Origin: Auanema rhodensis
Lineage: Eukaryota; Animalia; Nematoda
Length of the DNA stretch: 64,000 nucleotides
Reading direction: 5' to 3'
NCBI GenBank assembly: GCA_964057225.1
Contig: OZ059895.1
Span: 8,928,001 to 8,992,000 of the forward strand
Positions 1 through 57,550 of this stretch are shown in pieces. A program made the position numbers and the translations under genes. A model generated the notes under the pieces. The model was not told the DNA's origin, searched no databases, and saw nothing but the letters and a program-made list of their open reading frames with translations. The stretch's first letter is position 1. Every line of letters begins with the position of its first letter.

Positions 1-3000
1 ACCAGAAGAAGAACAACCCGTTGATATCGTTGAGAAGACAAAGAGCCTCGGAGACAAGATCACCGGTTTATTCAAGAAGGGACCAGCTCATCTGGATTAT
101 CCAACTTCTGAAACATACGATGGACCATTGACTTCCACTGAACGTGCTTCTGAAATTGAAGGAGATGCTCTAACTCATCATGTTGCTGTCTACCACAGTG
201 GACGATCTGACGATCAACCAACTACATCTCAACCTCAGAAACCAGAAGAAGAACAACCCGTTGATATCGTTGAGAAGTCAAAGAGCCTCGGAGACAAGAT
301 CACCGGCTTATTCAAGAAGGGACCAGCTCATCTGGATTATCCAACTTCTGAAACATACGATGGACCATTGACTTCCACTGGACGTGCTTCTGAAATTGAA
401 GGAGATGCTCTAACTCATCATGTTGCTGTCTACCACAGTGGACGATCTGACGATCAACCAACTACATCTCAACCTCAGAAACCAGAAGAAGAACAACCCG
501 TTGATATCGTTGAGAAGTCAAAGAGCCTCGGAGACAAGATCACCGGCTTATTCAAGAAGGGACCAGCTCATCTGGATTATCCAACTTCTGAAACATACGA
601 TGGACCATTGTCTTCTACCGGACGTGCTTCTGAAATTGAAAGAGATGCTCTAACTCATCATGTTGCTGTCTACCACAGTGGACGATCTGACGATCAACCA
701 ACTACATCTCAACCTCAGAAACCAGAAGAAGAACAACCCGTTGATATCGTTGAGAAGACAAAGAGCCTCGGAGACAAGATCACCGGCTTATTCAAGAAGG
801 GACCAGCTCATCTGGATTATCCAACTTCTGAAACATACGATGGACCATTGGCTTCCACTGGACGTGCTTCTGAAATTGAAGGAGATGGTCTAACTCATCA
901 TGTTGCTGTCTACCACAGTGGACGATCTGACGATCAACCAACTACATCTCAACCTCAGAAACCAGAAGAAGAACAACCCGTTGATATCGTTGAGAAGACA
1001 AAGAGCCTCGGAGACAAGATCACCGGTTTATTCAAGAAGGGACCAGCTCATCTGGATTATCCAACTTCTGAAACATACGATGGACCATTGACTACTACCG
1101 GACGTGCTTCTGAAATTGAAGGAGATGCTCTAACTCATCATGTTGCTGTCTACCACAGTGGACGATCTGACGATCAACCAACTACATCTCAACCTCAGAA
1201 ACCAGAAGAAGAACAACCCGTTGATATCGTTGAGAAGACAAAGAGCCTCGGAGACAAGATCACCGGTTTATTCAAGAAGGGACCAGCTCATCTGGATTAT
1301 CCAACTTCTGAAACATACGATGGACCATTGGCTTCCACTGGACGTGCTTCTGAAATTGAAGGAGATGCTCTAACTCATCATGTTGCTGTCTACCACAGTG
1401 GACGATCTGACGATCAACCAACTACATCTCAACCTCAGAAACCAGAAGAAGAACAACCCGTTGATATCGTTGAGAAGACAAAGAGCCTCGGAGACAAGAT
1501 CACCGGCTTATTCAAGAAGGGACCAGCTCATCTGGATTATCCAACTTCTGAAACATACGATGGACCATTGACTACTACCGGACGTGCTTCTGAAATTGAA
1601 GGAGATGCTTTAACTCATCATGTTGCTGTCTACCACAGTGGACGATCTGACGATCAACCAACTACATCTCAACCTCAGAAACCAGAAGAAGAACAACCCG
1701 TTGATATCGTTGAGAAGACAAAGAGCCTCGGTGACAAGATCACCGGCTTATTCAAGAAGGGACCAGCTCATCTGGATTATCCAACTTCTGAAACATACGA
1801 TGGACCATTGGCTTCTACTGGACGTGCTTCTGAAATTGAAGGAGATGCTCTAACTCATCATGTTGCTGTCTACCACAGTGGACGATCTGACGATCAACCA
1901 ACTACATCTCAACCTCAGAAACCAGAAGAAGAACAACCCGTTGATATCGTTGAGAAGACAAAGAGCCTTGGAGACAAGATCACCGGCTTATTCAAGAAGG
2001 GACCAGCTCATCTGGATTATCCAACTTCTGAAACATACGATGGACCATTGGCTTCCACTGGACGTGCTTCTGAAATTGAAGGAGATGCTCTTACTCATCA
2101 TGTTGCTGTCTACCACAGTGGACGATCTGACGATCAACCAACTACATCTCAACCTCAGAAACCAGAAGAAGAACAACCCGTTGATATCGTTGAGAAGACA
2201 AAGAGCCTCGGAGACAAGATCACCGGCTTATTCAAGAAGGGACCAGCTCATCTGGATTATCCAACTTCTGAAACATACGATGGACCATTGACTACTACCG
2301 GACGTGCTTCTGAAATTGAAGGAGATGCTTTAACTCATCATGTTGCTGTCTACCACAGTGGACGATCTGACGATCAACCAACTACATCTCAACCTCAGAA
2401 ACCAGAAGAAGAACAACCCGTTGATATCGTTGAGAAGACAAAGAGCCTCGGTGACAAGATCACCGGCTTATTCAAGAAGGGACCAGCTCATCTGGATTAT
2501 CCAACTTCTGAAACATACGATGGACCATTGGCTTCTACTGGACGTGCTTCTGAAATTGAAGGAGATGCTCTAACTCATCATGTTGCTGTCTACCACAGTG
2601 GACGATCTGACGATCAACCAACTACATCTCAACCTCAGAAACCAGAAGAAGAACAACCCGTTGATATCGTTGAGAAGACAAAGAGCCTTGGAGACAAGAT
2701 CACCGGCTTATTCAAGAAGGGACCAGCTCATCTGGATTATCCAACTTCTGAAACATACGATGGACCATTGGCTTCCACTGGACGTGCTTCTGAAATTGAA
2801 GGAGATGCTCTAACTCATCATGTTGCTGTCTACCACAGTGGACGATCTGACGATCAACCAACTACATCTCAACCTCAGAAACCAGAAGAAGAACAACCCG
2901 TTGATATCGTTGAGAAGACAAAGAGCCTTGGAGACAAGATCACCGGCTTATTCAAGAAGGGACCAGCTCATCTGGATTACCCAACTTCTGAAACATACGA

Positions 3001-6000
3001 TGGACCATTGGCTTCTACTGGACGTGCTTCTGAAATTGAAGGAGATGCTCTAATTCATCATGTTGCTGTCTACCACAGTGGACGATCTGACCATCAACCA
3101 ACTACATCTCAACCTCAGAAACCAGAAGAAGAACAACCCGTTGATATCGTTGAGAAGACAAAGAGCCTCGGAGACAAGATCACCGGCTTATTCAAGAAGG
3201 GACCAGCTCATCTGGATTATCCAACTTCTGAAACATACGATGGACCATTGACTACTACCGGACGTGCTTCTGAAATTGAAGGAGATGCTTTAACTCATCA
3301 TGTTGCTGTCTACCACAGTGGACGATCTGACGATCAACCAACTACATCTCAACCTCAGAAACCAGAAGAAGAACAACCCGTTGATATCGTTGAGAAGACA
3401 AAGAGTCTTGGAGACAAGATGACCGGCTTATTCAAGAAGGGACCAGCTCATCTGGATTATCCAACTTCTGAAATTTACGATGGACCATTGACTACTACCG
3501 GACGTGCTTCTGAAATTGAAGGAGATGCTCTAACTCATCATGTTGCTGTCTACCACAGTGGACGATCTGACGATCAACCAACTACATCTCAACCTCAGAA
3601 ACCAGAAGAAGAACAACCCGTTGATATCGTTGAGAAGACAAAGAGCCTTGGAGACAAGATCACCGGCTTATTCAAGAAGGGACCAGCTCATCTGGATTAT
3701 CCAACTTCTGAAACATACGATGGACCATTGGCTTCTACCGGACGTGCTTCTGAAATTGAAGGAGATGCTCTAACTCATCATGTTGCTGTCTACCACAGTG
3801 GACGATCTGACGATCAACCAACTACATCTCAACCTCAGAAACCAGAAGAAGAAGAACCCGTTGATATCGTTGAGAAGACAAAGAGCCTTGGAGACAAGAT
3901 CACCGGCTTATTCAAGAAGGGACCAGCTCATCTGGATTATCCAACTTCTGAAACATACGATGGACCATTGACTACTACCGGACGTGCTTCTGAAATTGAA
4001 GGAGATGCTCTAACTCATCATGTTGCTGTCTACCACAGTGGACGATCTGACGATCAACCAACTACATCTCAACCTCAGAAACCAGAAGAAGAACAACCCG
4101 TTGATATCGTTGAGAAGACAAAGAGCCTTGGAGACAAGATCACCGGCTTATTCAAGAAGGGACCAGCTCATCTGGATTATCCAACTTCTGAAACATACGA
4201 TGGACCATTGACTACTACCGGACGTGCTTCTGAAATTGAAGGAGATGCTCTAACTCATCATGTTGCTGTCTACCACAGTGGACGATCTGACGATCAACCA
4301 ACTACATCTCAACCTCAGAAACCAGAAGAAGAACAACCCGTTGATATCGTTGAGAAGACAAAGAGCCTTGGAGACAAGATCACCGGCTTATTCAAGAAGG
4401 GACCAGCTCATCTGGATTATCCAACTTCTGAAACATACGATGGACCATTGGCTTCCACTGGACGTGCTTCTGAAATTGAAGGAGATGCTCTAACTCATCA
4501 TGTTGCTGTCTACCACAGTGGACGATCTGACGATCAACCAACTACATCTCAACCTCAGAAACCAGAAGAAGAACAACCCGTTGATATCGTTGAGAAGACA
4601 AAGAGCCTCGGAGACAAGATCACCGGCTTATTCAAGAAGGGACCAGCTCATCTGGATTACCCAACTTCTGAAACATACGATGGACCATTGGCTTCTACTG
4701 GACGTGCTTCTGAAATTGAAGGAGATGCTCTAACTCATCATGTTGCTGTCTACCACAGTGGACGATCTGACGATCAACCAACTACATCTGAACCTCAGAA
4801 ACCAGAAGAAGAACAACCCGTTGATATCGTTGAGAAGACAAAGAGCCTCGGAGACAAGATCACCGGCTTATTCAAGAAGGGACCAGCTCATCTGGATTAC
4901 CCAACTTCTGAAACATACGATGGACCATTGGCTTCTACTGGACGTGCTTCTGAAATTGAAGGAGATGCTCTAACTCATCATGTTGCTGTCTACCACAGTG
5001 GACGATCTGACGATCAACCAACTACATCTCAACCTCAGAAACCAGAAGAAGAACAACCCGTTGATATCGTTGAGAAGACAAAGAGCCTTGGAGACAAGAT
5101 GACCGGCTTATTCAAGAAGGGACCAGCTCATCTGGATTATCCAACTTCTGAAATTTACGATGGACCATTGACTACTACCGGACGTGCTTCTGAAATTGAA
5201 GGAGATGCTCTAACTCATCATGTTGCTGTCTACCACAGTGGACGATCTGACGATCAACCAACTACATCTGAACCTCAGAAACCAGAAAAAGAACAACCCG
5301 TTGATATCGTTGAGAAGACAAAGAGCCTTGGAGACAAGATCACCGGCTTATTCAAGAAGGGACCAGCTCATCTGGATTATCCAACTTCTGAAATTTACGA
5401 TGGACCATTGACTACTACCGGACGTGCTTCTGAAATTGAAGGAGATGCTCTAACTCATCATGTTGCTGTCTACCACAGTGGACGATCTGACGATCAATCG
5501 ACTACATCTCAACCTCAGAAACCAGAAGAAGAACAACCCGTTGATATCGTTGAGAAGACAAAGAGCCTTGGAGACAAGATCACCGGCTTATTCAAGAAGG
5601 GACCAGCTCATCTGGATTATCCAACTTCTGAAACATACGATGGACCATTGGCTTCTACCGGACGTGCTTCTGAAATTGAAGGAGATGCTCTAACTCATCA
5701 TGTTGCTGTCTACCACAGTGGACGATCTGACGATCAACCAACTACATCTCAACCTCAGAAACCAGAAGAAGAACAACCCGTTGATATCGTTGAGAAGACA
5801 AAGAGCCTTGGAGACAAGATCACCGGCTTATTCAAGAAGGGACCAGCTCATCTGGATTATCCAACTTCTGAAACATACGATGGACCATTGACTACTACCG
5901 GACGTGCTTCTGAAATTGAAGGAGATGCTCTAACTCATCATGTTGCTGTCTACCACAGTGGACGATCTGACAATCAACCAACTACATCTCAACCTCAGAA

Positions 6001-9000
6001 ACCAGAAGAAGAACAACCCGTTGATATCGTTGAGAAGACAAAGAGCCTCGGAGACAAGATCACCGGCTTATTCAAGAAGGGACCAGCTCATCTGGACTAT
6101 CCAACTTCTGAAACATACGATGGACCATTGGCTTCCACTGGACGTGCTTCTGAAATTGAAGGAGACGCTCTTACTCATCATGTTGCTGTCTATCACAGTG
6201 GACGATCTGACGATCAACCAACTACATCTCAACCTCAGAAACCAGAAGAAGAACAACCCGTTGATATCGTTGAGAAGACAAAGAGCCTCGGAGACAAGAT
6301 CACCGGCTTATTCAAGAAGGGACCAGCTCATCTGGACTATCCAACTTCTGAAACATACGATGGACCATTGGCTTCCACTGGACGTGCTTCTGAAATTGAA
6401 GGAGACGCTCTTACTCATCATGTTGCTGTCTATCACAGTGGACGATCTGACGATCAACCAACTACATCTCAACCTCAGAAACCAGAAGAAGAACAACCCG
6501 TTGATATCGTTGAGAAGACAAAGAGCCTTGGAGACAAGATCACCGGCTTATTCAAGAAGGGACCAGCTCATCTGGATTATCCAACTTCTGAAACATACGA
6601 TGGACCATTGGCTTCTACCGGACGTGCTTCTGAAATTGAAGGAGATGCTCTAACTCATCATGTTGCTGTCTACCACAGTGGACGATCTGACGATCAACCA
6701 ACTACATCTCAACCTCAGAAACCAGAAGAAGAACAACCCGTTGATATCGTTGAGAAGACAAAGAGCCTTGGAGACAAGATCACCGGCTTATTCAAGAAGG
6801 GACCAGCTCATCTGGATTATCCAACTTCTGAAACATACGATGGACCATTGACTACTACCGGACGTGCTTCTGAAATTGAAGGAGATGCTCTAACTCATCA
6901 TGTTGCTGTCTACCACAGTGGACGATCTGACGATCAACCAACTACATCTCAACCTCAGAAACCAGAAGAAGAACAACCCGTTGATATCGTTGAGAAGACA
7001 AAGAGCCTCGGAGACAAGATCACCGGCTTATTCAAGAAGGGACCAGCTCATCTGGACTATCCAACTTCTGAAACATACGATGGACCATTGGCTTCTACTG
7101 GACGTGCTTCTGAAATTGAAGGAGATGCTCTAACTCATCATGTTGCTGTCTACCACAGTGGACGATCTGACGATCAACCAACTACATCTCAACCTCAGAA
7201 ACCAGAAGAAGAACAACCCGTTGATATCATTGAGAAGACAAAGAGCCTTGGAGACAAGATCACCGGCTTATTCAAGAAGGGACCAGCTCATCTGGATTAT
7301 CCAACTTCTGAAACATACGATGGACCATTGACTACTACCGGACGTGCTTCTGAAATTGAAGGAGATGCTCTAACTCATCATGTTGCTGTCTACCACAGTG
7401 GACGATCTGACGATCAACCAACTACATCTCAACCTCAGAAACCAGAAGAAGAACAACCCGTTGATATCGTTGAGAAGACAAAGAGCCTCGGAGACAAGAT
7501 CACCGGCTTATTCAAGAAGGGACCAGCTCATCTGGACTATCCAACTTCTGAAACATACGATGGACCATTGGCTTCTACTGGACGTGCTTCTGAAATTGAA
7601 GGAGATGCTCTAACTCATCATGTTGCTGTCTACCACAGTGGACGATCTGACGATCAACCAACTACATCTCAACCTCAGAAACCAGAAGAAGAACAACCCG
7701 TTGATATCGTTGAGAAGACAAAGAGCCTTGGAGACAAGATCACCGGCTTATTCAAGAAGGGACCAGCTCATCTGGATTATCCAACTTCTGAAACATACGA
7801 TGGACCATTGGCTTCCACTGGACGTGCTTCTGAAATTGAAGGAGATGCTCTAACTCATCATGTTGCTGTCTACCACAGTGGACGATCTGACGATCAACCA
7901 ACTACATCTCAACCTCAGAAACCAGAAGAAGAACAACCCGTTGATATCGTTGAGAAGACAAAGAGCCTCGGAGACAAGATCACCGGCTTGTTCAAGAAGG
8001 GACCAGCTCATCTGGATTATCCAACTTCTGAAACATACGATGGACCATTGTCTTCCACTGGACGTGCTTCTGAAATTGAAGGAGATGCTCTAACTCATCA
8101 TGTTGCTGTCTACCACAGTGGACGATCTGACGATCAACCAACTACATCTCAACCTCAGAAACCAGAAGAAGAACAACCCGTTGATATCGTTGAGAAGACA
8201 AAGAGCCTCGGAGACAAGATCACCGGCTTGTTCAAGAAGGGACCAGCTCATCTGGATTATCCAACTTCTGAAACATACGATGGACCATTGTCTTCCACTG
8301 GACGTGCTTCTGAAATTGAAGGAGATGCTCTAACTCATCATGTTGCTGTCTACCACAGTGGACGATCTGACGATCAACCAACTACATCTCAACCTCAGAA
8401 ACCAGAAGAAGAACAACCCGTTGATATTGTTGAGAAGACAAAGAGCCTCGGAGACAAGATCACCGGCTTATTCAAGAAGGGACCAGCTCATCTGGATTAT
8501 CCAACTTCTGAAACATACGATGGACCATTGACTACTACCGGACGTGCTTCTGAAATTGAAGGAGATGCTCTAACTCATCATGTTGCTGTCTACCACAGTG
8601 GACGATCTGACGATCAACCAACTACATCTCAACCTCAGAAACCAGAAGAAGAACAACCCGTTGATATCGTTGAGAAGACAAAGAGCCTTGGAGACAAGAT
8701 CACCGGCTTATTCAAGAAGGGACCAGCTCATCTGGATTATCCAACTTCTGAAACATACGATGGACCATTGGCTTCCACTGGACGTGCTTCTGAAATTGAA
8801 GGAGATGCTCTAACTCATCATGTTGCTGTCTACCACAGTGGACGATCTGACGATCAACCAACTACATCTCAACCTCAGAAACCAGAAGAAGAACAACCCG
8901 TTGATATCGTTGAGAAGACAAAGAGCCTTGGAGACAAGATCACCGGCTTATTCAAGAAGGGACCAGCTCATCTGGATTATCCAACTTCTGAAACATACGA

Positions 9001-15000: not shown

Positions 15001-18000
15001 TGGACCATTGACTACTACCGGACGTGCTTCTGAAATTGAAGGAGATGCTCTAACTCATCATGTTGCTGTCTACCACAGTGGACGATCTGACGATCAACCA
15101 ACTACATCTCAACCTCAGAAACCAGAAGAAGAACAACCCGTTGATATCGTTGAGAAGACAAAGAGCCTCGGAGACAAGATCACCGGCTTATTCAAGAAGG
15201 GACCAGCTCATCTGGATTATCCAACTTTTGAAACATACGATGGACCATTGACTACTACCGGACGTGCTTCTGAAATTGAAGGAGATGCTCTAACTCATCA
15301 TGTTGCTGTCTACCACAGTGGACGATCTGACGATCAACCAACTACATCTCAACCTCAGAAACCAGAAGAAGAACAACCCGTTGATATCGTTGAGAAGACA
15401 AAGAGCCTCGGAGACAAGATCACCGGCTTGTTCAAGAAGGGACCAGCTCATCTGGATTATCCAACTTCTGAAACATACGATGGACCATTGTCTTCCACTG
15501 GACGTGCTTCTGAAATTGAAGGAGATGCTCTAACTCATCATGTTGCTGTCTACCACAGTGGACGATCTGACGATCAACCAACTACATCTCAACCTCAGAA
15601 ACCAGAAGAAGAACAACCCGTTGATATCGTTGAGAAGACAAAGAGCCTCGGAGACAAGATCACCGGCTTGTTCAAGAAGGGACCAGCTCATCTGGATTAT
15701 CCAACTTCTGAAACATACGATGGACCATTGTCTTCCACTGGACGTGCTTCTGAAATTGAAGGAGATGCTCTAACTCATCATGTTGCTGTCTACCACAGTG
15801 GACGATCTGACGATCAACCAACTACATCTCAACCTCAGAAACCAGAAGAAGAACAACCCGTTGATATCGTTGAGAAGACAAAGAGCCTCGGAGACAAGAT
15901 CACCGGCTTGTTCAAGAAGGGACCAGCTCATCTGGATTATCCAACTTCTGAAACATACGATGGACCATTGTCTTCCACTGGACGTGCTTCTGAAATTGAA
16001 GGAGATGCTCTAACTCATCATGTTGCTGTCTACCACAGTGGACGATCTGACGATCAACCAACTACATCTCAACCTCAGAAACCAGAAGAAGAACAACCCG
16101 TTGATATCGTTGAGAAGACAAAGAGCCTTGGAGACAAGATCACCGGCTTATTCAAGAAGGGACCAGCTCATCTGGATTATCCAACTTCTGAAACATACGA
16201 TGGACCATTGACTACTACCGGACGTGCTTCTGAAATTGAAGGAGATGCTCTAACTCATCATGTTGCTGTCTACCACAGTGGACGATCTGACGATCAATCA
16301 ACTACATCTCAACCTCAGAAACCAGAAGAAGAACAACCCGTTGATATCGTTGAGAAGACAAAGAGCCTCGGAGACAAGATCACCGGCTTATTCAAGAAGG
16401 GACCAGCTCATCTGGATTATCCAACTTCTGAAACATACGATGGACCATTGACTACTACCGGACGTGCTTCTGAAATTGAAGGAGATGCTCTAACTCATCA
16501 TGTTGCTGTCTACCACAGTGGACGATCTGACGATCAATCAACTACATCTCAACCTCAGAAACCAGAAGAAGAACAACCCGTTGATATCGTTGAGAAGACA
16601 AAGAGCCTCGGAGACAAGATCACCGGCTTATTCAAGAAGGGACCAGCTCATCTGGATTATCCAACTTCTGAAACATACGATGGACCATTGACTACTACCG
16701 GACGTGCTTCTGAAATTGAAGGAGATGCTCTAACTCATCATGTTGCTGTCTACCACAGTGGACGATCTGACGATCAACCAACTACATCTCAACCTCAGAA
16801 ACCAGAAGAAGAACAACCCGTTGATATCGTTGAGAAGACAAAGAGCCTTGGAGACAAGATCACCGGCTTATTCAAGAAGGGACCAGCTCATCTGGATTAT
16901 CCAACTTCTGAAACATACGATGGACCATTGACTACTACCGGACGTGCTTCTGAAATTGAAGGAGATGCTCTAACTCATCATGTTGCTGTCTACCACAGTG
17001 GACGATCTGACGATCAACCAACTACATCTCAACCTCAGAAACCAGAAGAAGAACAACCCGTTGATATCGTTGAGAAGACAAAGAGCCTTGGAGACAAGAT
17101 CACCGGCTTATTCAAGAAGGGACCAGCTCATCTGGATTATCCAACTTCTGAAACATACGATGGACCATTGACTACTACCGGACGTGCTTCTGAAATTGAA
17201 GGAGATGCTCTAACTCATCATGTTGCTGTCTACCACAGTGGACGATCTGACGATCAACCAACTACATCTCAACCTCAGAAACCAGAAGAAGAACAACCCG
17301 TTGATATCGTTGAGAAGACAAAGAGCCTCGGAGACAAGATCACCGGCTTATTCAAGAAGGGACCAGCTCATCTGGATTATCCAACTTCTGAAACATACGA
17401 TGGACCATTGACTACTACCGGACGTGCTTCTGAAATTGAAGGAGATGCTCTAACTCATCATGTTGCTGTCTACCACAGTGGACGATCTGACGATCAACCA
17501 ACTACATCTCAACCTCAGAAACCAGAAGAAGAACAACCCGTTGATATCGTTGAGAAGACAAAGAGCCTTGGAGACAAGATCACCGGCTTATTCAAGAAGG
17601 GACCAGCTCATCTGGATTATCCAACTTCTGAAACATACGATGGACCATTGACTACTACCGGACGTGCTTCTGAAATTGAAGGAGATGCTCTAACTCATCA
17701 TGTTGCTGTCTACCACAGTGGACGATCTGACGATCAACCAACTACATCTCAACCTCAGAAACCAGAAGAAGAACAACCCGTTGATATCGTTGAGAAGACA
17801 AAGAGCCTTGGAGACAAGATCACCGGCTTATTCAAGAAGGGACCAGCTCATCTGGATTATCCAACTTCTGAAACATACGATGGACCATTGACTACTACCG
17901 GACGTGCTTCTGAAATTGAAGGAGATGCTCTAACTCATCATGTTGCTGTCTACCACAGTGGACGATCTGACGATCAACCAACTACATCTCAACCTCAGAA

Positions 18001-33000: not shown

Positions 33001-36000
33001 TGGACCATTGGCTTCCACTGGACGTGCTTCTGAAATTGAAGGATATGCTCTAACTCATCGTGTTGCTGTCTACCACAGTGGACGATCTGACGATCAACCA
33101 ACTACATCTCAACCTCAGAAACCAGAAGAAGAACAACCCGTTGATATCGTTGAGAAGACAAAGAGCCTTGGAGATAAGATCACCGGCTTATTCAAGAAGG
33201 GACCAGCTCATCTGGATTATCCAACTTCTGAAATTTACGATGGACCATTGACTACTACCGGACGTGCTTCTGAAATTGAAGGAGATGCTCTTACTCATCA
33301 TGTTGCTGTCTACCACAGTGGACGATCTGACGATCAACCAACTACATCTCAACCTCAGAAACCAGAAGAAGAACAACCCGTTCATATCGTTGAGAAGACA
33401 AAGAGCCTTGGAGACAAGATCACCGGAATTTTCAAGAAGGGACCAGCTCATCTGGATTATCCAACTTCTGAAACATACGATGGACCATTGACTACTACCG
33501 GACGTGCTTCTGAAATTGAAGGAGATGCTCTCACTCATCATGTTGCTGTCTACCACAGTGGACGATCTGACGATCAACCAACTACATCTCAACCTCAGAA
33601 ACCAGAAGAAGAGCAGCATGTTGATATCGTGGAGAAGACAAAGAGGCTCGGAGACAAGATCACTGGCGTTTTCAAGAAGGGACCAGCTCATGTGGATTAT
33701 CCAACTTCTGACGTCTACGATGGACCATTGGCTTCTACTGGACGTGCTTCTGAAATTGAAGGAGATGCTCTTACTCATCATGTTGCTGTCTACCACAGTG
33801 GACGATCTGACGATCAACCAACTACATCTCAACCTCAGAAACCAGAAGAAGAACAACCCGTTGATATCGTTGAGAAGACAAAGAGCCTCGGAGACAAGAT
33901 CACCGGCTTATTCAAGAAGGGACCAGCTCATCTGAATTATCCAACTTCTGAAACATACGATGGACCATTGACTACTACCGGACGTGCTTCTGAAATTGAA
34001 GGAGATGCTCTCACTCATCATGTTGCTGTCTACCACAGTGGACGATCTGACGATCAACCAACTACATCTCAACCTCAGAAACCAGAAGAAGAGCAGCATG
34101 TTGATATCGTGGAGAAGACAAAGAGGCTCGGAGACAAGATCACTGGCGTTTTCAAGAAGGGACCAGCTCATGTGGATTATCCAACTTCTGACGTCTACGA
34201 TGGACCATTGGCTTCTACTGGACGTGCTTCTGAAATTGAAGGAGATGCTCTTACTCATCATGTTGCTGTCTACCACAGTGGACGATCTGACGATCAACCA
34301 ACTACATCTCAACCTCAGAAACCAGAAGAAGAACAACCCGTTGATATCGTTGAGAAGACAAAGAGCCTCGGAGACAAGATCACCGGCTTATTCAAGAAGG
34401 GACCAGCTCATCTGAATTATCCAACTTCTGAAACATACGATGGACCATTGACTACTACCGGACGTGCTTCTGAAATTGAAGGAGATGCTCTCACTCATCA
34501 TGTTGCTGTCTACCACAGTGGACGATCTGACGATCAACCAACTACATCTCAACCTCAGAAACCAGAAGAAGAGCAGCATGTTGATATCGTGGAGAAGACA
34601 AAGAGGCTCGGAGACAAGATCACTGGCGTTTTCAAGAAGGGACCAGCTCATCTGAATTATCCAACTTCTGAAACATACGATGGACCATTGACTACTACCG
34701 GACGTGCTTCTGAAATTGAAGGAGATGCTCTATCTCATCATGTTGCTGTCTACCACAGTGGACGATCTGACGATCAACCAACTACATCTCAACCTCAGAA
34801 ACCAGAAGAAGAACAACCCGTTGATATCGTTGAGAAGACAAAGAGCCTCGGAGACAAGATCACCGGCTTGTTCAAGAAGGGACCAGCTCATCTGGATTAT
34901 CCAACTTCTGAAACATACGATGGACCATTGACTACTACCGGACGTGCTTCTGAAATTGAAGGAGATGCTCTCACTCATCATGTTGCTGTCTACCACAGTG
35001 GACGATCTGACGATCAACCAACTACATCTCAACCTCAGAAACCAGAAGAAGAGCAGCATGTTGATATCGTTGAGAAGACAAAGAGCCTCGGAGACAAGAT
35101 CACCGGCTTATTCAAGAAGGGACCAGCTCATCTGAATTATCCAACTTCTGAAACATACGATGGACCATTGACTACTACCGGACGTGCTTCTGAAATTGAA
35201 GGAGATGCTCTATCTCATCATGTTGCTGTCTACCACAGTGGACGATCTGACGATCAACCAACTACATCTCAACCTCAGAAACCAGAAGAAGAACAACCCG
35301 TTGATATCGTTGAGAAGACAAAGAGCCTCGGAGACAAGATCACCGGCTTGTTCAAGAAGGGACCAGCTCATCTGGATTATCCAACTTCTGAAACATACGA
35401 TGGACCATTGACTACTACCGGACGTGCTTCTGAAATTGAAGGAGATGCTCTCACTCATCATGTTGCTGTCTACCACAGTGGACGATCTGACGATCAACCA
35501 ACTACATCTCAACCTCAGAAACCAGAAGAAGAGCAGCATGTTGATATCGTGGAGAAGACAAAGAGGCTCGGAGACAAGATCACTGGCGTTTTCAAGAAGG
35601 GACCAGCTCATCTGGATTATCCAACTTCTGAAACATACGATGGACCATTGACTACTACCGGACGTGCTTCTGAAATTGAAGGAGATGCTCTAACTCATCA
35701 TCTTGCTGTCTACCACAGTGGACGATCTGACGATCAACCAACTACATCTCAACCTCAGAAACCAGAAGAAGAACAACCCGTTGATATCGTTGAGAAGACA
35801 AAGAGCCTTGGAGACAAGATCACCGGCTTATTCAAGAAGGGACCAGCTCATCTGGATTATCCAACTTCTGAAATTTACGATGGACCATTGACTACTACCG
35901 GACGTGCTTCTGAAATTGAAGGAGATGCTCTATCTCATCATGTTGCTGTCTACCACAGTGGACGATCTGACGATCAACCAACTACATCTCAACCTCAGAA

Positions 36001-39000
36001 ACCAGAAGAAGAACAACCCGTTCATATCGTTGAGAAGACAAAGAGCCTCGGAGACAAGATTACCGGCTTATTCAAGAAGGGACCAGCTCATCTGGATTAT
36101 CCAACTTCTGAAACATACGATGGACCATTGACTACTACCGGACGTGCTTCTGAAATTGAAGGAGATGCTCTCACTCATCATGTTGCTGTCTACCACAGTG
36201 GACGATCTGACGATCAACCAACTACATCTCAACCTCAGAAACCAGAAGAAGAGCAGCATGTTGATATCGTGGAGAAGACAAGGAGGCTCGGAGACAAGAT
36301 CACTGGCGTTTTCAAGAAGGGACCAGCTCATGTGGATTATCCAACTTCTGACGTCTACGATGGACCATTGGCTTCTACTGGACGTGCTTCTGAAATTGAA
36401 GGAGATGCTCTCACTCATCATGTTGCTGTCTACCACAGTGGACGATCTGACGATCAACCAACTACATCTCAACCTCAGAAACCAGAAGAAGAGCAGCATG
36501 TTGAAATCGTGGAGAAGACAAAGAGCCTCGGAGACAAGATGACCGGCGTTTTCAAGAAGGGACCAGCTCATGTGGATTATCCAACTTCTGACGTCTACGA
36601 TGGACCATTGGCTTCTACTGGACGTGCTTCTGAAATTGAAGGAGATGCTCTTACTCATCATGTTGCTGTCTACCACAGTGGACGATCTGACGATCAACCA
36701 ACTACATCTCAACCTCAGAAACCAGAAGAAGAACAACCCGTTGATATCGTTGAGAAGACAAAGAGCCTTGGAGACAAGATCACCGGCTTATTCAAGAAGG
36801 GACCAGCTCATGTGGATTATCCAACTTCTGACGTCTACGATGGACCATTGGCTTCTACTGGACGTGCTTCTGAAATTGAAGGAGATGCTCTTACTCATCA
36901 TGTTGCTGTCTACCACAGTGGACGATCTGACGATCAACCAACTACATCTCAACCTCAGAAACCAGAAGAAGAACAACCCGTTCATATCGTTGAGAAGACA
37001 AAGAGCCTCGGAGACAAGATCACCGGCTTATTCAAGAAGGGACCAGCTCATCTGGATTATCCAACTTCTGACGTCTACGATGGACCATTGGCTTCTACTG
37101 GACGTGCTTCTGAAATTGAAGGAGATGCTCTATCTCATCATGTTGCTGTCTACCACAGTGGACGATCTGACGATCAACCAACTACATCTCAACCTCAGAA
37201 ACCAGAAGAAGAACAACCCGTTCATATCGTTGAGAAGACAAAGAGGCTCGGAGACAAGATCACTGGCGTTTTCAAGAAGGGACCAGCTCATGTGGATTAT
37301 CCAACTTCTGACGTATACGATGGACCATTGGCTTCTACCGGACGTGCTTCTGAAATTGAAGGAGATGCTCTATCTCATCATGTTGCTGTCTACCACAGTG
37401 GACGATCTGACGATCAACCAACTACATCTCAACCTCAGAAACCAGAAGAAGAACAACCCGTTCATATCGTTGAGAAGACAAAGAGCCTTGGAGACAAGAT
37501 CACTGGCGTTTTCAAGAAGGGACCAGCTCATGTGGATTATCCAACTTCTGACGTATACGATGGACCATTGGCTTCTACCGGACGTGCTTCTGAAATTGAA
37601 GGAGATGCTCTATCTCATCATGTTGCTGTCTACCACAGTGGACGATCTGACGATCAACCAACTACATCTCAACCTCAGAAACCAGAAGAAGAACAACCCG
37701 TTCATATCGTTGAGAAGACAAAGAGGCTCGGAGACAAGATCACTGGCGTTTTCAAGAAGGGACCAGCTCATCTGGAATATCCAACTTATGAAACATACGA
37801 TGGACCATTGACTACTACCGGACGTGCTTCTGAAATTGAAGGAGATGCTCTCACTCATCATGTTGCTGTCTACCACAGTGGACGATCTGACGATCAACCA
37901 ACTACATCTCAACCTCAGAAACCAGAAGAAGAGCAGCATGTTGATATCGTGGAGAAGACAAAGAGGCTCGGAGACAAGATCACTGGCGTTTTCAAGAAGG
38001 GACCAGCTCATGTGGATTATCCAACTTCTGACGTCTACGATGGACCATTGGCTTCTACTGGACGTGCTTCTGAAATTGAAGGAGATGCTCTTACTCATCA
38101 TGTTGCTGTCTACCACAGTGGACGATCTGACGATCAACCAACTACATCTCAACCTCAGAAGTCAGAGGTAGAACATCATAACGACATCATTGAAAAAGCT
38201 AAAAACCTCGGAGACAAGATCACCGGAATTTTCAAGAAGGGACCAGCTCATCTGGATTATCCAACTTCTGAAACATACGATGGACCATTGACTACTACCG
38301 GACGTGCTTCTGAAATTGAAGGAGATGCTCTTGCTCATCATGTTGCTGTCTACCACAGTGGACGATCTGACGATCAACCAACTACATCTCAACCTCAGAA
38401 ACCAGAAGAAGAGCAGCATGTTGATATCGTGGAGAAGACAAGGAGCCTCGGAGACAAGATCACTGGCGTTTTCAAGAAGGGACCAGCTCATGTGGATTAT
38501 CCAACTTCTGACGTCTACGATGGACCATTGGCTTCTACTGGACATGCTTCTGAAATTGAAGGAGATGCTCTTACTCATCATGTTGCTGTCTACCACAGTG
38601 GACGATCTGACGATAAACCAACTACATCTCAACCTCAGAAGTCAGAGGTAGAACATCATAACGACATCATTGAAAAAGCTAAAAACCTCGGAGACAAGAT
38701 CACCGGAATTTTCAAAAAGGGACCAGCTCATCTGGATTATCCAACTTCGGAAACATACGATGGACCATTGGCTTCCACTGCACGTGCTTCTGAAATTGAA
38801 GGAGATGCTCTTACTCATCATGTTGCTGTCTACCACAGTGGACGATCTGACGATCAACCAGCTACATCTCAACCTCAGAAACCAGAAGAAGAACAACCCG
38901 TTGACATCGTTGAAAAGGCAAAGAGCCTCGGAGACAAGATCACCGGCTTATTCAAGAAGGGACCCGCTCATCTGGATTATCCAACTTCTGACGTCTACGA

Positions 39001-42000
39001 TGGACCATTGGCTTCCACTGCACGTGCTTCTGAAATTGAAGGAGATGCTCTAACTCATCATGTTGCTGTCTACCACAGTGGACGATCTGACGATCAACCA
39101 ACTACATCTCAACCTCAGAAACCAGAAGAAGAACAACCCGTTGACATCGTTGAGAAGGCAAAGAGCCTCGGAGACAAGATCACCGGAATTCTCAAGAAGG
39201 GACCAGCTCATCTGGACTATCCAACTTCTGAAACATACGATGGACCATTGACTTCTACCGGACGTGCTTCTGATATTGAAGAAGATGCTCTTACTCATCA
39301 TGTTGCTGTGTACCACAGTGGACGATCTGACGATCAACCAACTACATCTCAACCTCAGAAGTCAGAGGTAGAACATCATAACGACATCATTGAAAAAGCT
39401 AAAAACCTCGGAGACAAGATCACCGGAGTTTTCAAGAAGGGACCAGCTCATGTGGATTATCCAACTTCTGACGTCTACGATGGACCATTGGCTTCTACTG
39501 GACGTGCTTCTGAAATTGAAGGAGATGCTCTTACTCATCATGTTGCTGTCTACCACAGTGGACGATCTGACGATCAACCAACTACATCTCAACCTCAGAA
39601 GTCAGAGGTAGAACATCATAACGACATCATTGAAAAAGCTAAAAACCTCGGAGACAAGATCACCGGAGTTTTCAAGAAGGGACCAGCTCATGTGGATTAT
39701 CCAACTTCTGACGTATACGATGGACCATTGGCTTCTACTGGACGTGCTTCTGAAATTGAAGGAGATGCTCTCACTCATCATGTTGCTGTCTACCACAGTG
39801 GACGGTCTGAGGACCATCCAACTACATCTCAACCTCAGAAGTCAAAGGAAGAACATCATAACGACATCATTGAAAAAGATAAAAACCTCGGAGACAAGAT
39901 CACCGGCTTATTCAAGAAGGGACCAGCTCATGTGGATTATCCAACTTCTGACGTATACGATGGACCACTGGCTTCTACTGGACGTGCTTCTGAAATTGAA
40001 GGAGATGCTCTCACTCATCATGTTGCTGTCTACCACAGTGGACGATCTGACGATCAACCAACTACATCTCAACCTCAGAAGTCAAAGGAAGAACATCATA
40101 ACGACATCATTGAAAAAGATAAAAACCTCGGAGACAAGATCACCGGCTTATTCAAGAAGGGACCAGCTCATGTGGATTATCCAACTTCTGACGTATACGA
40201 TGGACCACTGGCTTCTACTGGACGTGCTTCTGAAATTGAAGGAGATGCTCTCACTCATCATGTTGCTGTCTACCACAGTGGACGATCTGACGATCAACCA
40301 ACTACATCTCAACCTCAGAAGTCAAAGGAAGAACATCATAACGACATCATTGAAAAAGATAAAAACCTCGGAGACAAGATCACCGGCTTATTCAAGAAGG
40401 GACCAGCTCATGTGGATTATCCAACTTCTGACGTCTACGATGGACCATTGGCTTCTACTGGACGTGCTTCTGAAATTGAAGGAGATGCTCTTACTCATCA
40501 TGTTGCTGTCTACCACAGTGGACGATCTGACGATCAACCAACTACATCTCAACCTCAGAAGTCAGAGGTAGAACATCATAACGACATCATTGAAAAAGCT
40601 AAAAACCTCGGAGACAAGATCACCGGAGTTTTCAAGAAGGGACCAGCTCATGTGGATTATCCAACTTCTGACGTATACGATGGACCATTGGCTTCTACTG
40701 GACGTGCTTCTGAAATTGAAGGAGATACTCTTGCTCATCATGTTGCTGTCTACCACAGTGGACGATCTGACGATCAACCAACAACATCTCAACCTGAGAA
40801 ACCAGAAGAAGAACAACCTGTTGATATCGTTGAGAAGACAAAGAGCCTCGGAGACAAGATCACCGGAGTTTTTAAGAAGGGACCAGCTCATGTGGATTAT
40901 CCAACTTCTGACGTATACGATGGACCATTGTCTTCTACCGGACGTGCTTCTGAAATTGAAGGAGATGCTCTCACTCATCATGTTGCTGTCTACCACAGTG
41001 GACGATCTGACGATCAACCAACTACATCTCAACCTCAGAAGTCAGAGGTAGAACATCATAACGACATCATCGAAAAAGCTAAAAACCTCGGAGACAAGAT
41101 CACAGGCTTATTCAAGAAGGGACCAGCTCATGTGGATTATCCAACTTCTGACGTCTACGATGGACCATTGGCTTCTACTGGACGTGCTTCTGAAATTGAA
41201 GGAGATGCTCTTGCTCATCATGTTGCTGTCTACCACAGTGGACGATCTGACGATCAACCAACTACATCTCAACCTCAGAAGTCAGAGGTAGAACATCATA
41301 ACGACATCATTGAAAAAGCTAAAAACCTCGGAGACAAGATCACCGGAGTTTTCAAGAAGGGACCAGCTCATGTGGATTATCCAACTTCTGACGTATACGA
41401 TGGACCATTGACTTCTACTGGACGTTCTTCTGAAATTGAAGGAGATGCTCTTGCTCATCATGTTGCTGTCTACCACAGTGGACGATCTGACGATCAACCA
41501 ACAACATCTCAACCTGAGAAACCAGAAGAAGAACAACCTGTTGATATCGTCGAGAAGACAAAGAGCCTCGGAGACAAGATCACCGGAGTTTTCAAGAAGG
41601 GACCAGCTCATGTGGATTATCCAACTTCTGACGTATACGATGGACCATTGTCTTCTACCGGACGTGCTTCTGAAATTGAAGGAGATGCTCTCACTCATCA
41701 TGTTGCTGTCTACCACAGTGGACGATCTGACGATCAACCAACTACATCTCAACCTCAGAAGTCAGAGGTAGAACATCATAACGACATCATTGAAAAAGCT
41801 AAAAACCTCGGAAACAAGATCACCGGAGTTTTCAAGAAGGGACCAGCTCATGTGGATTATCCAACTTCTGACGTATACGATGGACCATTGTCTTCTACCG
41901 GACGTGCTTCTGAAATTGAAGGAGATGCTCTCACTCATCATGTTGCTGTCTACCACAGTGGACGATCTGACGATCAACCAACAACATCTCAACCTGAGAA

Positions 42001-43920
42001 ACCAGAAGAAGAACAACCTGTTGATATCGTTGAGAAGACAAAGAGCCTCGGAGACAAGATCACCGGAGTTTTCAAGAAGGGACCAGCTCATCTGGATTAT
42101 CCAACTTCTGACGTATACGATGGACCATTGACTTCTACTGGACGTTCTTCTGAAATTGAAGGAGATGCTCTTGCTCATCATGTTGCTGTCTACCACAGTG
42201 GACGATCTGACGATCAAGCAACTACATGTCAACCTGTGAAACCAGAAGAAGAACAACCTGTTGATATCGTTGAGAAGACAAAGAGCCTCGGAGACAAGAT
42301 CACCGGCTTATTCAAGAAGGGACCAGCTCATCTGGACTATCCAACTTCTGTCGTATACGATGGACCATTGGCTACTACTGGACGTTCTTCTGAAATTGAA
42401 GGAGATGCTCTTGCTCATCATGTTGCTGTCTACCACAGTGGACGATCTGAGGACCATCCAACTACATCTCAACCTGAGAAACCAGAAGAAGAACAACCTG
42501 TTGATATCGTTGAGAAGACAAAGAGCCTCGGAGACAAGATCACCGGCTTATTCAAGAAGGGACCAGCTCATCTGGACTATCCAACTTCTGACGTATACGA
42601 TGGACCATTGGCTACTACTGGACGTTCTTCTGAAATTGAAGGAGATGCTCTAACTCATCATGTTGCTTTCTACCACAGTGGACGATCTGAGGACCATCCA
42701 ACTACATCTCAACCTGAGAAACCAGAAGAAGAACAACCTGTTGATATCGTTGAGAAGACAAAGAGCCTCGGAGACAAGATCACCGGCTTATTCAAGAAGG
42801 GACCAGCTCATCTGGACTATCCAACTTCTGACGTATACGATGGACCACTGGCTTCTACTGGACGTGCTTCTGAAATTGAAGGAGATGCTCTTACTCATCA
42901 TGTTGCTGTCTACCACAGTGGACGATCTGAGGACCATCCAATTACATCTCAACCTGAGAAACCAGAAGAAGAACAACCTGTTGATATCGTTGAGAAGACA
43001 AAGAGCCTCGGAGACAAGATCACCGGCTTATTCAAGAAGGGACCAGCTCATCTGGACTATCCAACTTCTGACGTATACGATGGACCACTGGCTTCTACTG
43101 GACGTGCTTCTGAAATTGAAGGAGATGCTCTAACTCATCATGTTGCTGTCTACCACAGTGGACGATCTGAGGACCATCCAACTACATCTCAACCTGAGAA
43201 ACCAGAAGAAGAACAACCTGTTGATATCGTTGAGAAGACAAAGAGCCTCGGAGACAAGATCACCGGCTTATTGAAGAAGGGACCAGCTCATGTGGATTAT
43301 CCAACTTCTGACGTATACGATGGACCATTGGCTTCTACTGGACGTGCTTCTGAAATTGAAGGAGATGCTCTTACTCATCATGTTGCTGTCTACCACAGTG
43401 GACGATCTGAGGACCATTCAACTACATCTCAACCTGAGAAACCAGAAGAAGAACAACCTGTTGATATCGTTGAGAAGACAAAGAGCCTCGGAGACAAGAT
43501 CACCGGCTTATTGAAGAAGGGACCAGCTCATCTGGATTATCCAACTTCTGACGTATACGATGGACCATTGGCTTCCACTGCACGTGCTTCTGAAATTGAA
43601 GGAGATGCTCTAACTCATCATGTTGCTGTCTACCACAGTGGACGATCTGACGATCAACCAACTACATCTCAACCTCAGAAACCAGAAGAAGAACAACCCG
43701 TTGACATCGTTGAGAAGGCAAAGAGCCTCGGAGACAAGATCACCGGAATTCTCAAGAAGGGACCAGCTCATCTGGACTATCCAACTTCTGAAACATACGA
43801 TGGACCATTGACTTCTACCGGACGTGCTTCTGATATTGAAGGAGATGCTCTTACTCATCATGTTGCTGTCTACCACAGTGGACAATCTGACGATCAACCA
43901 ACTACATCTCAATCTCAAAA
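1..43920 (+). repeat. Coding tandem array, 240-bp unit, about 183 copies in the window, continuing upstream
   Basis: The 60-nt display lines recur every 4 lines with no phase slip. Consensus unit: PEEEQPVDIVEKTKSLGDKITGLFKKGPAHLDYPTSETYDGPL(T/A/S)(T/S)TGRASEIEGDALTHHVAVYHSGRSDDQPTTSQPQK. Confidence 0.99.
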
Positions 43921-45091: not shown

Positions 45092-45260
45092 ATTATTTAA
45101 ATATTCAATTTCTCATTCGATGCCTTTCCAGTATTGTAAATAGTAGTGCTTATATTTCATTAGAGACGATTAGAGAAGGTATTTTTTTCCGGGTGCCACC
45201 ATTTTAAAATGTGCGGTATGAATTTCTATTATTGATCTTATGTTATGAATAATTCTTATA

Positions 45261-57424: not shown

Positions 57425-57550
57425 ACGTTGTTATTGTTTCAATAAATTGTTCCAAGATTTTTTAAACGTAATTATACAGTGGTAATTTCCAATTAATATT
57501 TAAAACATGGGGTGCAAAGCAATTAACGATATTTGACATGTAGTAGGCTG

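What the first reader, a model, noticed from the sequence alone, without database searches (positions are those of the whole stretch)
2..45091. Giant repeat protein (at least 15,000 aa) with a C-terminal lipid-anchor signal: candidate membrane-tethered periodic scaffold
Seen: about 183 near-identical 80-aa units in one open frame, a consensus lacking Cys, Trp, Met and Asn, no transmembrane segment, and a unique tail ending in a polybasic stretch plus CaaX. I do not recognise the unit as an Ig, FnIII, spectrin, ankyrin or collagen domain. Known: giant exons of homogenised repeats occur in cortical or tethering proteins such as AHNAK and ANC-1. Inference: a cytoplasmic, largely disordered, multivalent scaffold or elastic tether fixed to a membrane by its C-terminus, with length set by copy number. 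It may be an extreme expansion of an uncharacterised nematode family. C. elegans W05F2.4 comes to mind as a candidate, but that is unverified recall.
Basis: partly seen in the sequence, partly recalled or inferred. Interest (0 to 1): 0.9.

Follow-up and report, generated by a model that had tools for sequence, protein, structure and literature searches.

The report
Giant lipid-anchored repeat protein gene
This is a real, transcribed nematode gene whose single exon encodes at least 15,029 amino acids (183 near-identical 80-residue units). It is a four-fold expanded version of the uncharacterised C. elegans gene ZC247.1, and every relative examined ends in the same lipid-attachment signal.

Summary
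Nt 2-43921 hold 183 in-register 240-nt units with no stop and no indel. A unique 389-codon tail follows and ends in a polybasic stretch plus CTML.

The frame looks selected, not accidental. Of 127 distinct variants, 50 are synonymous, 77 are non-synonymous and none is a stop (about 5 stops expected). RNA contigs from four runs cover the last unit, the tail and about 150 nt of 3' UTR without an intron, then drop to zero.

The gene is not an orphan and it is not W05F2.4. It is the orthologue of C. elegans ZC247.1 (4,389 aa). ZC247.1 has the same design: one 11-kb exon holding 46.6 units of 231 bp.

The family spans nematode clades III-V. Members share a conserved N-terminal domain, 15-90 units, and a conserved tail about 240 aa long. 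All 30 family C-termini recovered keep a Cys at position -4 (CTML, CAML, CVML, CNML or CNVI).

The same unit also fills the long isoforms of FRM-1 (protein 4.1). Pfam, PDB and the ESM Atlas give no match for the unit or the tail. AlphaFold2 predicts disorder, apart from a weak amphipathic helix in each unit and a confident basic C-terminal helix.

Best reading: a cytoplasmic, disordered, multivalent protein held on a membrane by geranylgeranylation. That function is inferred, not shown. It is an extreme new member of a catalogued but unstudied family.

The parts
2..33601 (+). Units 1-140 of the 80-aa (240-nt) repeat. This is the highly homogenised core of the array, 97-100% identical to the consensus. 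The frame is open at the window edge, so the exon continues upstream.
   Evidence: Internal segmental duplications give exact self-matches of 3,029 nt at a shift of 12 units and 2,115 nt at a shift of 14 units.
33602..43921 (+). Units 141-183, the older and more diverged 3' flank of the array (86-99% to the consensus). Two unit subtypes are mixed here, one with the PEEEQPVDIVEKTK start and one with the SEVEHHNDIIEKAK start, and LDYPTSETY alternates with VDYPTSDVY.
   Evidence: RNA contigs overhang at 43752 with letters of the ITGVF unit variant, which occurs only in this part of the array. So at least this part is in RNA.
43922..45088 (+). Unique basic C-terminal tail of 389 aa (pI 9.7, net charge +16). 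Its last 240 aa or so form the conserved C-terminal domain of the ZC247.1 family.
   Evidence: It is 55% identical to Auanema sp. JU1783, 41-48% to strongylids and 34% to C. elegans ZC247.1. AlphaFold2 mean pLDDT is 49. Pfam has no match.
44423..44458 (+). The WTT..E.....Y motif (tail residues W168-Y179). W, T, T, E and Y are invariant in all 24 aligned tails. A similar W.VTRR..TE motif sits in the N-terminal domain of orthologues.
45029..45070 (+). Polybasic stretch (tail residues 370-383, nine Arg in 14 residues) inside the predicted C-terminal helix 365-388 (pLDDT 80-87).
45077..45088 (+). The CaaX box CTML. The Cys sits at position -4 and the stop codon follows at 45089-45091.
   Evidence: The Cys is invariant in 24 of 24 aligned tails. 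In 29 of 29 proteins that carry the polybasic motif, the protein ends exactly six residues after it as xxCaaX: CTML 21, CAML 3, CVML 2, CNVI 2, CNML 1. P0005 makes 30.
45092..45245 (+). 3' UTR. RNA contigs end at 45178-45245 and depth is zero from 45276 to 45493.
   Evidence: A TATGAA hexamer at about 45227 may be the poly(A) signal. That is read from the sequence and is tentative.

Best explanation
Shown: this is the 3' part of one giant protein-coding exon of the Auanema-like orthologue of C. elegans ZC247.1. ZC247.1 belongs to a nematode-wide, uncharacterised family. Members have a conserved N-terminal domain of about 200 aa with no signal peptide, an array of acidic units of about 75-80 aa that are homogenised within each species, and a basic C-terminal domain that always ends in a polybasic stretch, two residues and then C-a-a-[L/I]. 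In this genome the array has grown to at least 183 units in the window. Inferred: the total is about 200 units, for a protein of roughly 16,500 aa and 1.8 MDa. The protein is made in the cytoplasm and stays largely disordered. GGTase-I geranylgeranylates the invariant Cys (X = Leu). The prenyl group and the adjacent Arg-rich helix then hold the C-terminus on the inner face of a membrane, as in polybasic-CaaX GTPases. The array presents about 200 copies of three conserved short motifs: an amphipathic KITGLFKK helix, DYP.SE.Y.GPL, and PL..HV.VYHSGRSD. It would act as a multivalent binding platform or as a long flexible tether between the membrane and whatever binds the N-terminal domain. The array is maintained by unequal exchange or gene conversion under selection for an intact frame.
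For: Coding: there are no stops or indels in 43.9 kb, synonymous changes are in excess, and third-position changes predominate. Transcription: in four runs, contigs skip the GT..AG introns of the two neighbouring genes, so the runs are RNA. One contig covers 43854-45245 colinearly with no differences, and depth is zero in the intergenic gap. Family: an exhaustive phmmer search found 135 cluster representatives, and every one that was looked up is a nematode. The tail finds ZC247.1 at E = 1e-39. ZC247.1 has the same layout: one open stretch of 3,744 codons holding 46.6 units of 231 bp at 96% matches. The convergent NHP2 + Nopp140 neighbour is also found in Dictyocaulus and Oesophagostomum. Lipid anchor: the Cys at -4 is invariant across clades III, IV and V, and the stop codon position is fixed. 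X is always L or I. A polybasic helix predicted with pLDDT 80-87 lies next to it. Cytoplasmic: orthologue N-termini are hydrophilic and there is no transmembrane segment. Disorder: AlphaFold2 gives pLDDT 48-49 for three units and for the tail. Pfam, PDB and the Atlas give no match. Membrane context: the same unit fills the long isoforms of FRM-1 (protein 4.1), a FERM-domain membrane linker. In C. elegans the protein is detected by proteomics (PMC5104976). [quoted passage not shown]
Against: No prenylation has been measured in any species. No binding partner or localisation is known. The N-terminus of this gene lies outside the window. The RNA evidence covers only the last units and the tail, comes from short-read contigs of a single study, and does not give the strand. 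Translation of the full array is not shown in this species. Copy number is 15-16 in C. briggsae and C. brenneri, 48 in C. elegans, 82 in Strongyloides and about 200 here, which argues against a tight length requirement. lin-11(n389) removes part of ZC247.1, with a breakpoint between its exons 10 and 11 (PMC9253893), so loss of that part is not reported as lethal.
Confidence: 0.6

Rival explanations
1. Same gene and same family, but the conserved C-terminus is not a lipid anchor. The Arg-rich helix would act as an RNA-binding, nuclear or nucleolar targeting peptide. Alternatively the last three residues would be a PDZ ligand.
For: The stretch has nine Arg in 14 residues and is predicted as a helix. 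That resembles arginine-rich motifs and basic targeting signals (general knowledge). T-M-L fits the class I PDZ pattern [S/T]-x-hydrophobic.
Against: Position -2 is T, A, V or N across the family, so the PDZ class I pattern is not conserved. The Cys at -4 and the exact protein end are invariant in 30 of 30. That pattern is what a CaaX box predicts. A protein of 0.5-1.8 MDa is unlikely to enter the nucleus.
Confidence: 0.15
2. The protein is real, but the extreme copy number here has no function of its own. It would be a tolerated runaway expansion by unequal crossing-over in a permissive disordered region, in a genome that is prone to tandem-repeat growth.
For: Copy number varies more than ten-fold between species. 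The core units are 97-100% identical, and exact duplications of 12 and 14 units point to very recent growth. The Auanema rhodense germline genome is reported to be dominated by multi-megabase tandem-repeat blocks (bioRxiv 10.64898/2026.08.27.747507).
Against: The frame and every unit stay intact with no stops or indels, and non-synonymous variants are depleted. So the units themselves are under selection. That does not show that their number is.
Confidence: 0.3
3. The array length is an assembly artefact, or only short isoforms (a few units plus the tail) are ever made.
For: RNA contigs break inside the array, so continuity over 44 kb is not shown by RNA. In the short-read assembly of Auanema sp. 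JU1783 the gene is shattered into contigs of 561 and 2,447 nt.
Against: The longest exact self-match is 3.0 kb, far below the length of modern long reads. The array has 102 distinct unit sequences and an ordered divergence gradient. Neither is what collapse or inflation produces. The reference-quality C. elegans genome shows the same single-exon design.
Confidence: 0.07
4. It is a non-coding satellite that happens to be open, or it encodes a secreted mucin-like protein.
For: By eye it looks like a satellite. The composition is rich in Thr, Ser, Pro and acidic residues.
Against: The unit is conserved at the protein level across three nematode clades. The variants carry a coding signature and there is RNA. 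Full-length orthologues have no signal peptide, and a CaaX box acts only in the cytosol.
Confidence: 0.02

Closest known systems
C. elegans ZC247.1 (NP_492698.3, 4,389 aa, chromosome I beside lin-11) and its orthologues, all labelled hypothetical or uncharacterised
   Same: The unit core motif, the C-terminal domain, and an ending of the same form (C. elegans has RRARQRVRNICTML). The design is also the same: one giant exon of homogenised units, 46.6 x 231 bp at 96% in C. elegans.
   Different: This gene has about four times more units (at least 183, against 48). The unit is 80 aa, not 77. The unit consensus is only 45% identical, which is typical of concerted evolution. The downstream neighbours differ from C. 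elegans but match the strongylids.
Long isoforms of FRM-1 / protein 4.1 (C. elegans ZK270.2, 4,530-4,648 aa)
   Same: They carry 33 copies of the same unit core, [DG]YP.SE.Y.GPLD.T.R...PL..H..VYHSG.S. They are also giant, membrane-attached and repeat-filled. The 10 x 609-bp tandem repeats in frm-1 are noted in PMC4039745.
   Different: FRM-1 has an N-terminal FERM/FA module and a 4.1 C-terminal domain. The window's tail has neither the 4.1 CTD nor any other Pfam domain, and it ends in CaaX. The spacing of FRM-1 units is 98/105 aa. This is a different gene.
Polybasic-CaaX membrane anchors of small GTPases (K-Ras4B, Rac1, RhoA type)
   Same: A Cys four residues from the end, X = Leu as in GGTase-I substrates, and a basic cluster immediately upstream. 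This comparison rests on general knowledge of the family.
   Different: The cargo is a disordered protein of 0.5-1.8 MDa, not a 21-kDa GTPase. Modification has not been shown.
AHNAK and ANC-1/nesprin
   Same: Giant proteins with long arrays of homogenised repeats, partly in giant exons, that act at membranes or the cell cortex.
   Different: No sequence or domain relationship was found. There is no KASH transmembrane tail and no calponin-homology or spectrin domain. They are analogies only.

Membership tests
ZC247.1 family (nematode giant repeat protein) | Array of units of about 75-80 aa with the core KITGLFKK ... DYP.SE.Y.GPL ... PL..HV.VYHSGRSD | tested here: met
   phmmer with E down to 0 against family members. 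A unit HMM finds 48 units in ZC247.1, 82 in S. stercoralis and at least 62 in Mesorhabditis. Alignment A2 gives the invariant and near-invariant columns.
ZC247.1 family (nematode giant repeat protein) | Conserved C-terminal domain (WTT..E.....Y, VHHPIYPP, FTVGTPF, LPMIE.GA.ECRR, polybasic stretch + CaaX) | tested here: met
   Alignment A1 of 24 tails. E = 1e-39 to ZC247.1 and 2.7e-54 to Ostertagia.
ZC247.1 family (nematode giant repeat protein) | Conserved N-terminal domain (P.W.VTRR..TE, TVTTTERVQI, TTTIITTTTTTY) without a signal peptide | not testable with these tools
   The N-terminus lies upstream of the window. The domain is defined from 13 orthologues.
ZC247.1 family (nematode giant repeat protein) | Shared gene neighbourhood with orthologues | tested here: met
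   A convergent Ribosomal_L7Ae (NHP2) + SRP40_C (Nopp140) gene lies downstream in Dictyocaulus and Oesophagostomum, as in the window. This is not so in C. elegans.
CaaX-prenylated proteins (GGTase-I substrates) | Cys at position -4, hydrophobic a2, and X = Leu (or Ile, Phe) | tested here: met
   CTML here. The Cys is invariant, a2 is M or V, and X is L or I in 30 of 30 family C-termini.
CaaX-prenylated proteins (GGTase-I substrates) | C-terminus exposed to the cytosol (no signal peptide, no transmembrane segment) | tested here: inconclusive
   There is no transmembrane segment in 15,029 residues, and orthologue N-termini are hydrophilic. This gene's own N-terminus was not seen.
CaaX-prenylated proteins (GGTase-I substrates) | Covalent isoprenoid on the Cys | not testable with these tools
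   This needs metabolic labelling or mass spectrometry.
Protein 4.1 / FRM-1 | 4.1 C-terminal domain (PF05902) at the C-terminus, with FERM at the N-terminus | tested here: not met
   C. elegans FRM-1 has FERM_N/M/C, FA and 4_1_CTD. The window's tail has no Pfam match and aligns with the ZC247.1 tails instead. A FERM domain at the unseen N-terminus cannot be excluded directly, but no orthologue with this tail has one.
Non-coding satellite DNA | No constraint on the reading frame | tested here: not met
   0 stops, 0 indels, synonymous excess, third-position bias, plus protein-level conservation across clades.

The most novel reading that the evidence does not exclude
A single disordered unit of about 78 aa is a nematode-specific membrane-cortex module. 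It is used by two giant proteins that reach the membrane in different ways: FERM-anchored protein 4.1/FRM-1 and geranylgeranyl-anchored ZC247.1. Its arrays act as multivalent brushes or tethers whose valency evolves quickly (15 to about 200 copies). On this reading the Auanema protein, at roughly 1.8 MDa, would be by far the largest lipid-anchored protein known. It would also be a natural experiment on how far such an array can be stretched.
Probability: 0.3. Interest if true: 0.75.

Novelty: new member of a known kind. Interest (0 to 1): 0.55.

Why it matters
At 15,029 or more codons in one exon, this is among the largest genes in any nematode. From memory, it is in the size class of C. elegans TTN-1. 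It draws attention to a conserved, expressed family (ZC247.1) that no paper found in the full-text library characterises, although the family occurs in free-living nematodes and in animal- and plant-parasitic ones (filariae, hookworms, Strongyloides, Bursaphelenchus). Three features found here were not mentioned in any paper found in the library searches. First, the CaaX ending is invariant. Second, conserved domains sit at both ends of the protein. Third, the repeat unit is shared with protein 4.1/FRM-1. Together they turn an uncharacterised repeat-rich protein into a testable hypothesis in C. elegans: a prenyl-anchored multivalent cortical scaffold. The locus is also a clean case of concerted evolution of a coding array. 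Units are 97-100% identical within the species and 45-68% identical between species, under frame-preserving selection.

Tried and rejected
1. The only paper that mentions it calls it a chromosome I gene with no known domains. The tail search instead finds ZC247.1. I could not fetch the W05F2.4 sequence, so distant paralogy is not excluded.

2. Pfam on four units, on the tail, and on ZC247.1 and its C. briggsae orthologue gives nothing real. The listed hits (DBF4_BRCT, HTH_psq, PqqA and others) have no stretch that passes on its own. They are repeat-summed noise.

3. The ESM Atlas feature search on the units, the tail and an orthologue's N-terminal domain was blank.

4. Foldseek of the tail model against the PDB gives no match better than E = 3.7. 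Profile searches against PDB sequences give nothing better than E = 0.014 for the units and nothing for the tail.

5. Introns in the tail. A few GTAAG and TTCAG strings occur, but the RNA contigs are colinear with the genome.

6. The conserved Y-x-G-P in each unit as a phospho-Tyr (Crk-type YxxP) site. Mesorhabditis and Aphelenchoides have Phe at that position. An aromatic structural or binding role is therefore more likely, and I do not propose it.

7. Database names given to family members: '63 kDa sperm flagellar membrane protein', 'LPXTG cell wall anchor', 'Nesprin-1'. These look like automatic labels driven by low complexity, and no matching domain was found.

8. Rfam and tRNA scans of nt 43900-64000 found nothing.

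9. A literature search for CTML together with geranylgeranyl found no paper.

Full report

Yes. Tandem Repeats Finder reports one array at nt 1-43934 with period 240, 183.1 copies, 97% matches and 0% indels. Cutting the sequence from nt 2 gives 183 units in perfect register. Frame 2 has no stop, while the other five frames have 259-1494. The frame is open at the window edge and closes with a TAG at 45089-45091. That makes 15,029 codons in the window, about 1.63 MDa, pI 5.1.

The consensus unit lacks Cys, Trp, Met and Asn. The highest 19-residue hydropathy mean is 0.27, so there is no transmembrane segment. The last 389 residues are unique and basic (pI 9.7, +16). They end with nine Arg in 14 residues, then N-Y and CTML.

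I could not read that DNA.

**2. Is the open frame more than an accident of homogenisation?**

Yes. There are 127 distinct variants against the consensus: 50 synonymous, 77 non-synonymous and none a stop.
- Random substitution of the consensus would give 24-29% synonymous changes and about 4% stops, or about 5 stops.
- Codon positions 1/2/3 carry 40/27/60 variants.
- The same variants read in the two wrong frames create 7 stops each.
- No unit has gained or lost a base.

The first 140 units are 97-100% identical to the consensus. The last 43 diverge to 86-95% and mix two subtypes.

Exact self-matches of 3,029 nt (shift of 12 units) and 2,115 nt (shift of 14 units) record recent multi-unit duplications. 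They are much shorter than long sequencing reads. With 102 distinct unit sequences as well, I see no sign of assembly inflation.

**3. Is it transcribed?**

Their contigs skip six introns of 42-46 nt with CT..AC ends in the two downstream minus-strand genes, so the runs are RNA.

In all four runs one contig covers 43854 or 43904 through 45178-45245. It differs from the genome at no position in three runs and at one position in the fourth. It has no joint. Depth is then zero from 45276 to 45493.

So the last unit, the whole tail, the stop and about 150 nt of 3' UTR lie on one unspliced RNA. Contigs that overhang at 43752 carry the ITGVF unit variant, which occurs only in the diverged 3' part of the array. 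That part is therefore in RNA too. The central array cannot be assessed from contigs, and contigs do not give the strand.

**4. What is it?**

An exhaustive phmmer search with the last three units plus the tail found 135 cluster representatives, 55 of them below 1e-30. Some proteins reach 7,691 aa with up to 57 matched stretches. Every named hit I looked up is a nematode. Two gene families carry the unit.

*Family A.*
- It has a conserved N-terminal domain with no signal peptide, then the unit array, then a conserved C-terminal domain.
- Members come from clade V (Auanema sp. JU1783, Mesorhabditis, Pristionchus, Diploscapter, strongylids, Caenorhabditis), clade IV (Strongyloides, Bursaphelenchus, Aphelenchoides, Ditylenchus) and clade III (Loa, Litomosoides, Anisakis).
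- The C. elegans member is ZC247.1 (NP_492698.3, 4,389 aa), not W05F2.4.
- In the C. elegans reference genome, ZC247.1 holds one open stretch of 3,744 codons with 46.6 units of 231 bp at 96% matches. That is the same design at a quarter of the size.
- Orthology is further supported by the neighbourhood. In Dictyocaulus and Oesophagostomum the gene is followed by a convergent NHP2 (Ribosomal_L7Ae) plus Nopp140 (SRP40_C) gene, as in the window.

*Family B.*
- These are the long isoforms of FRM-1 (protein 4.1), with a FERM/FA module at the N-terminus, a 4.1 CTD at the C-terminus and 33 units at 98/105-aa spacing.
- The window's tail has no 4.1 CTD, so this gene is not frm-1.

**5. Concerted evolution and copy number**

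Units are very alike within a protein. Adjacent units are 94% identical in C. elegans, 97% in Mesorhabditis and 94% in Bursaphelenchus, though only 43-50% in Strongyloides.

Unit consensuses differ strongly between species. The window's consensus is 68% identical to JU1783, 59% to Ostertagia, 52% to Loa and 45% to C. elegans.

Unit counts are 15-16 in C. briggsae and C. brenneri, 48 in C. elegans, 82 in S. stercoralis, at least 62 in Mesorhabditis and at least 183 here. In the short-read assembly of JU1783 the gene is shattered into contigs of 561 and 2,447 nt.

**6. Anatomy relevant to mechanism**

Across 34 three-unit segments the conserved columns form three short blocks: L..KITGLFKK, then AH.DYP.SE.Y.GPL..T.R, then PL..HV.VYHSGRSD.

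AlphaFold2 with that alignment gives mean pLDDT 48. The only recurrent element is a weak helix over unit residues 8-22, which is also the stretch with the highest hydrophobic moment.

The tail model has mean pLDDT 49. It shows a small hairpin (residues 312-324), a short helix (338-346) and a confident C-terminal helix (365-388, pLDDT 80-87) that carries the polybasic stretch.

In the alignment of 24 tails the invariant residues are W168, T169, T170, E173, Y179 and C386, the CaaX Cys. In 29 of 29 proteins with the polybasic motif the chain ends exactly six residues later as xxCaaX: CTML 21, CAML 3, CVML 2, CNVI 2, CNML 1. P0005 makes 30.

Position -2 varies (T, A, V or N), which argues against a PDZ ligand. 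X is always Leu or Ile. By the established rules for CaaX prenyltransferases that points to GGTase-I (general knowledge, not tested here).

**7. How it most likely works**

Shown:
- a transcribed coding exon;
- orthology to ZC247.1;
- predicted disorder;
- an acidic array joined to a basic tail;
- an invariant CaaX next to a basic helix;
- no transmembrane segment, and no signal peptide in orthologues;
- the same unit in a FERM-domain membrane linker.

Inferred:
- The protein is cytosolic and is geranylgeranylated at the C-terminus.
- The lipid and the basic helix hold it on the inner face of a membrane.
- The array offers tens to hundreds of copies of three conserved short motifs, acting as a multivalent platform or long flexible tether.
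- The conserved N-terminal domain probably binds a second structure.

What is known for C. elegans fits an intracellular protein of several tissues. [quoted passage not shown] The lin-11(n389) deletion also affects ZC247.1, with a breakpoint between its exons 10 and 11 (PMC9253893). The protein is seen by mass spectrometry (PMC5104976).

The ten-fold range of copy number argues against a precise ruler. Whether the extreme number here is adaptive or a tolerated runaway expansion is open. The latter is plausible in a genus whose germline genome is reported to be dominated by tandem repeats (bioRxiv 10.64898/2026.08.27.747507).

**8. Novelty and verdict**

The gene family is catalogued in databases but uncharacterised. 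Five open-access papers mention ZC247.1, and none studies it. The Auanema rhodense genome preprint does not mention a 240-bp repeat or ZC247.

This locus is therefore a new and extreme member of a known kind. Three points seem worth passing on:
- the invariant CaaX on a protein of 0.5-1.8 MDa;
- the conserved domains at both ends;
- the sharing of the unit with protein 4.1.

Noticed in passing
window 45523-46172 (-) and 46273 to about 50000 (-): An NHP2-like (L7Ae) gene and a Nopp140/dao-5-like gene lie next to each other on the minus strand, convergent with the giant gene. Both are partners of the H/ACA snoRNP. The same pair follows the orthologue in Dictyocaulus and Oesophagostomum. In Dictyocaulus the annotators fused the two into one 1,441-aa product (SRP40_C + Ribosomal_L7Ae).
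   Followed up: partly
window 46900-49830 (-): The Nopp140-like gene is itself a tandem array, with 96-99-bp units and higher-order periods of 228-426 bp. The units encode acidic Ser/Asp blocks and basic KKAPVKTPVKATPVQKKAA blocks. RNA contigs confirm four evenly spaced introns of 42-45 nt at the 3' end (46471-46909). Similar CT..AC-bounded short gaps appear to recur through the array, so the introns may be part of the repeating unit.
   Followed up: partly
window 55422-55772 (-) and 56860-57485 (+): Ribosomal protein genes resembling rpl-24 and rps-10 lie downstream, so the giant gene sits among housekeeping genes. ORFs at about 62.5-63.8 kb encode Cys-rich, EGF-like pieces.
   Followed up: no
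related proteins P0031, P0013, P0108, P0027 (FRM-1 / protein 4.1 long isoforms): The same unit core fills the giant isoforms of FRM-1 in Caenorhabditis and Bursaphelenchus (28-64 units). The helix block KITGLFKK is weak or missing in several of them. The C. elegans frm-1 array is the '10 tandem repeats of 609 bases' mentioned in PMC4039745.
   Followed up: partly
alignments A1 (tails) and A3 (N-terminal domains of orthologues): The two conserved domains that flank the array carry look-alike Thr-rich motifs: N-terminal P.W.VTRRQRTE and TVTTTERVQI, and C-terminal H.WTTV.ERTEVSY. They may be duplicates of one binding motif placed at both ends of the array.
   Followed up: no
P0006, P0151, P0003, P0032 (database names): Family members carry misleading automatic names: '63 kDa sperm flagellar membrane protein', 'LPXTG cell wall anchor domain-containing protein', 'Nesprin-1'. 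One 2026 paper lists ZC247.1 among autophagy-associated genes without giving a source (PMC13196573).
   Followed up: no
L004 and L005 (Auanema sp. JU1783, GCA_943334845.2): In the closest sequenced relative the orthologue survives only as contigs of 561 and 2,447 nt. Its array is collapsed, so the copy number there is unknown. Short-read nematode assemblies probably under-report this family's size in general.
   Followed up: partly
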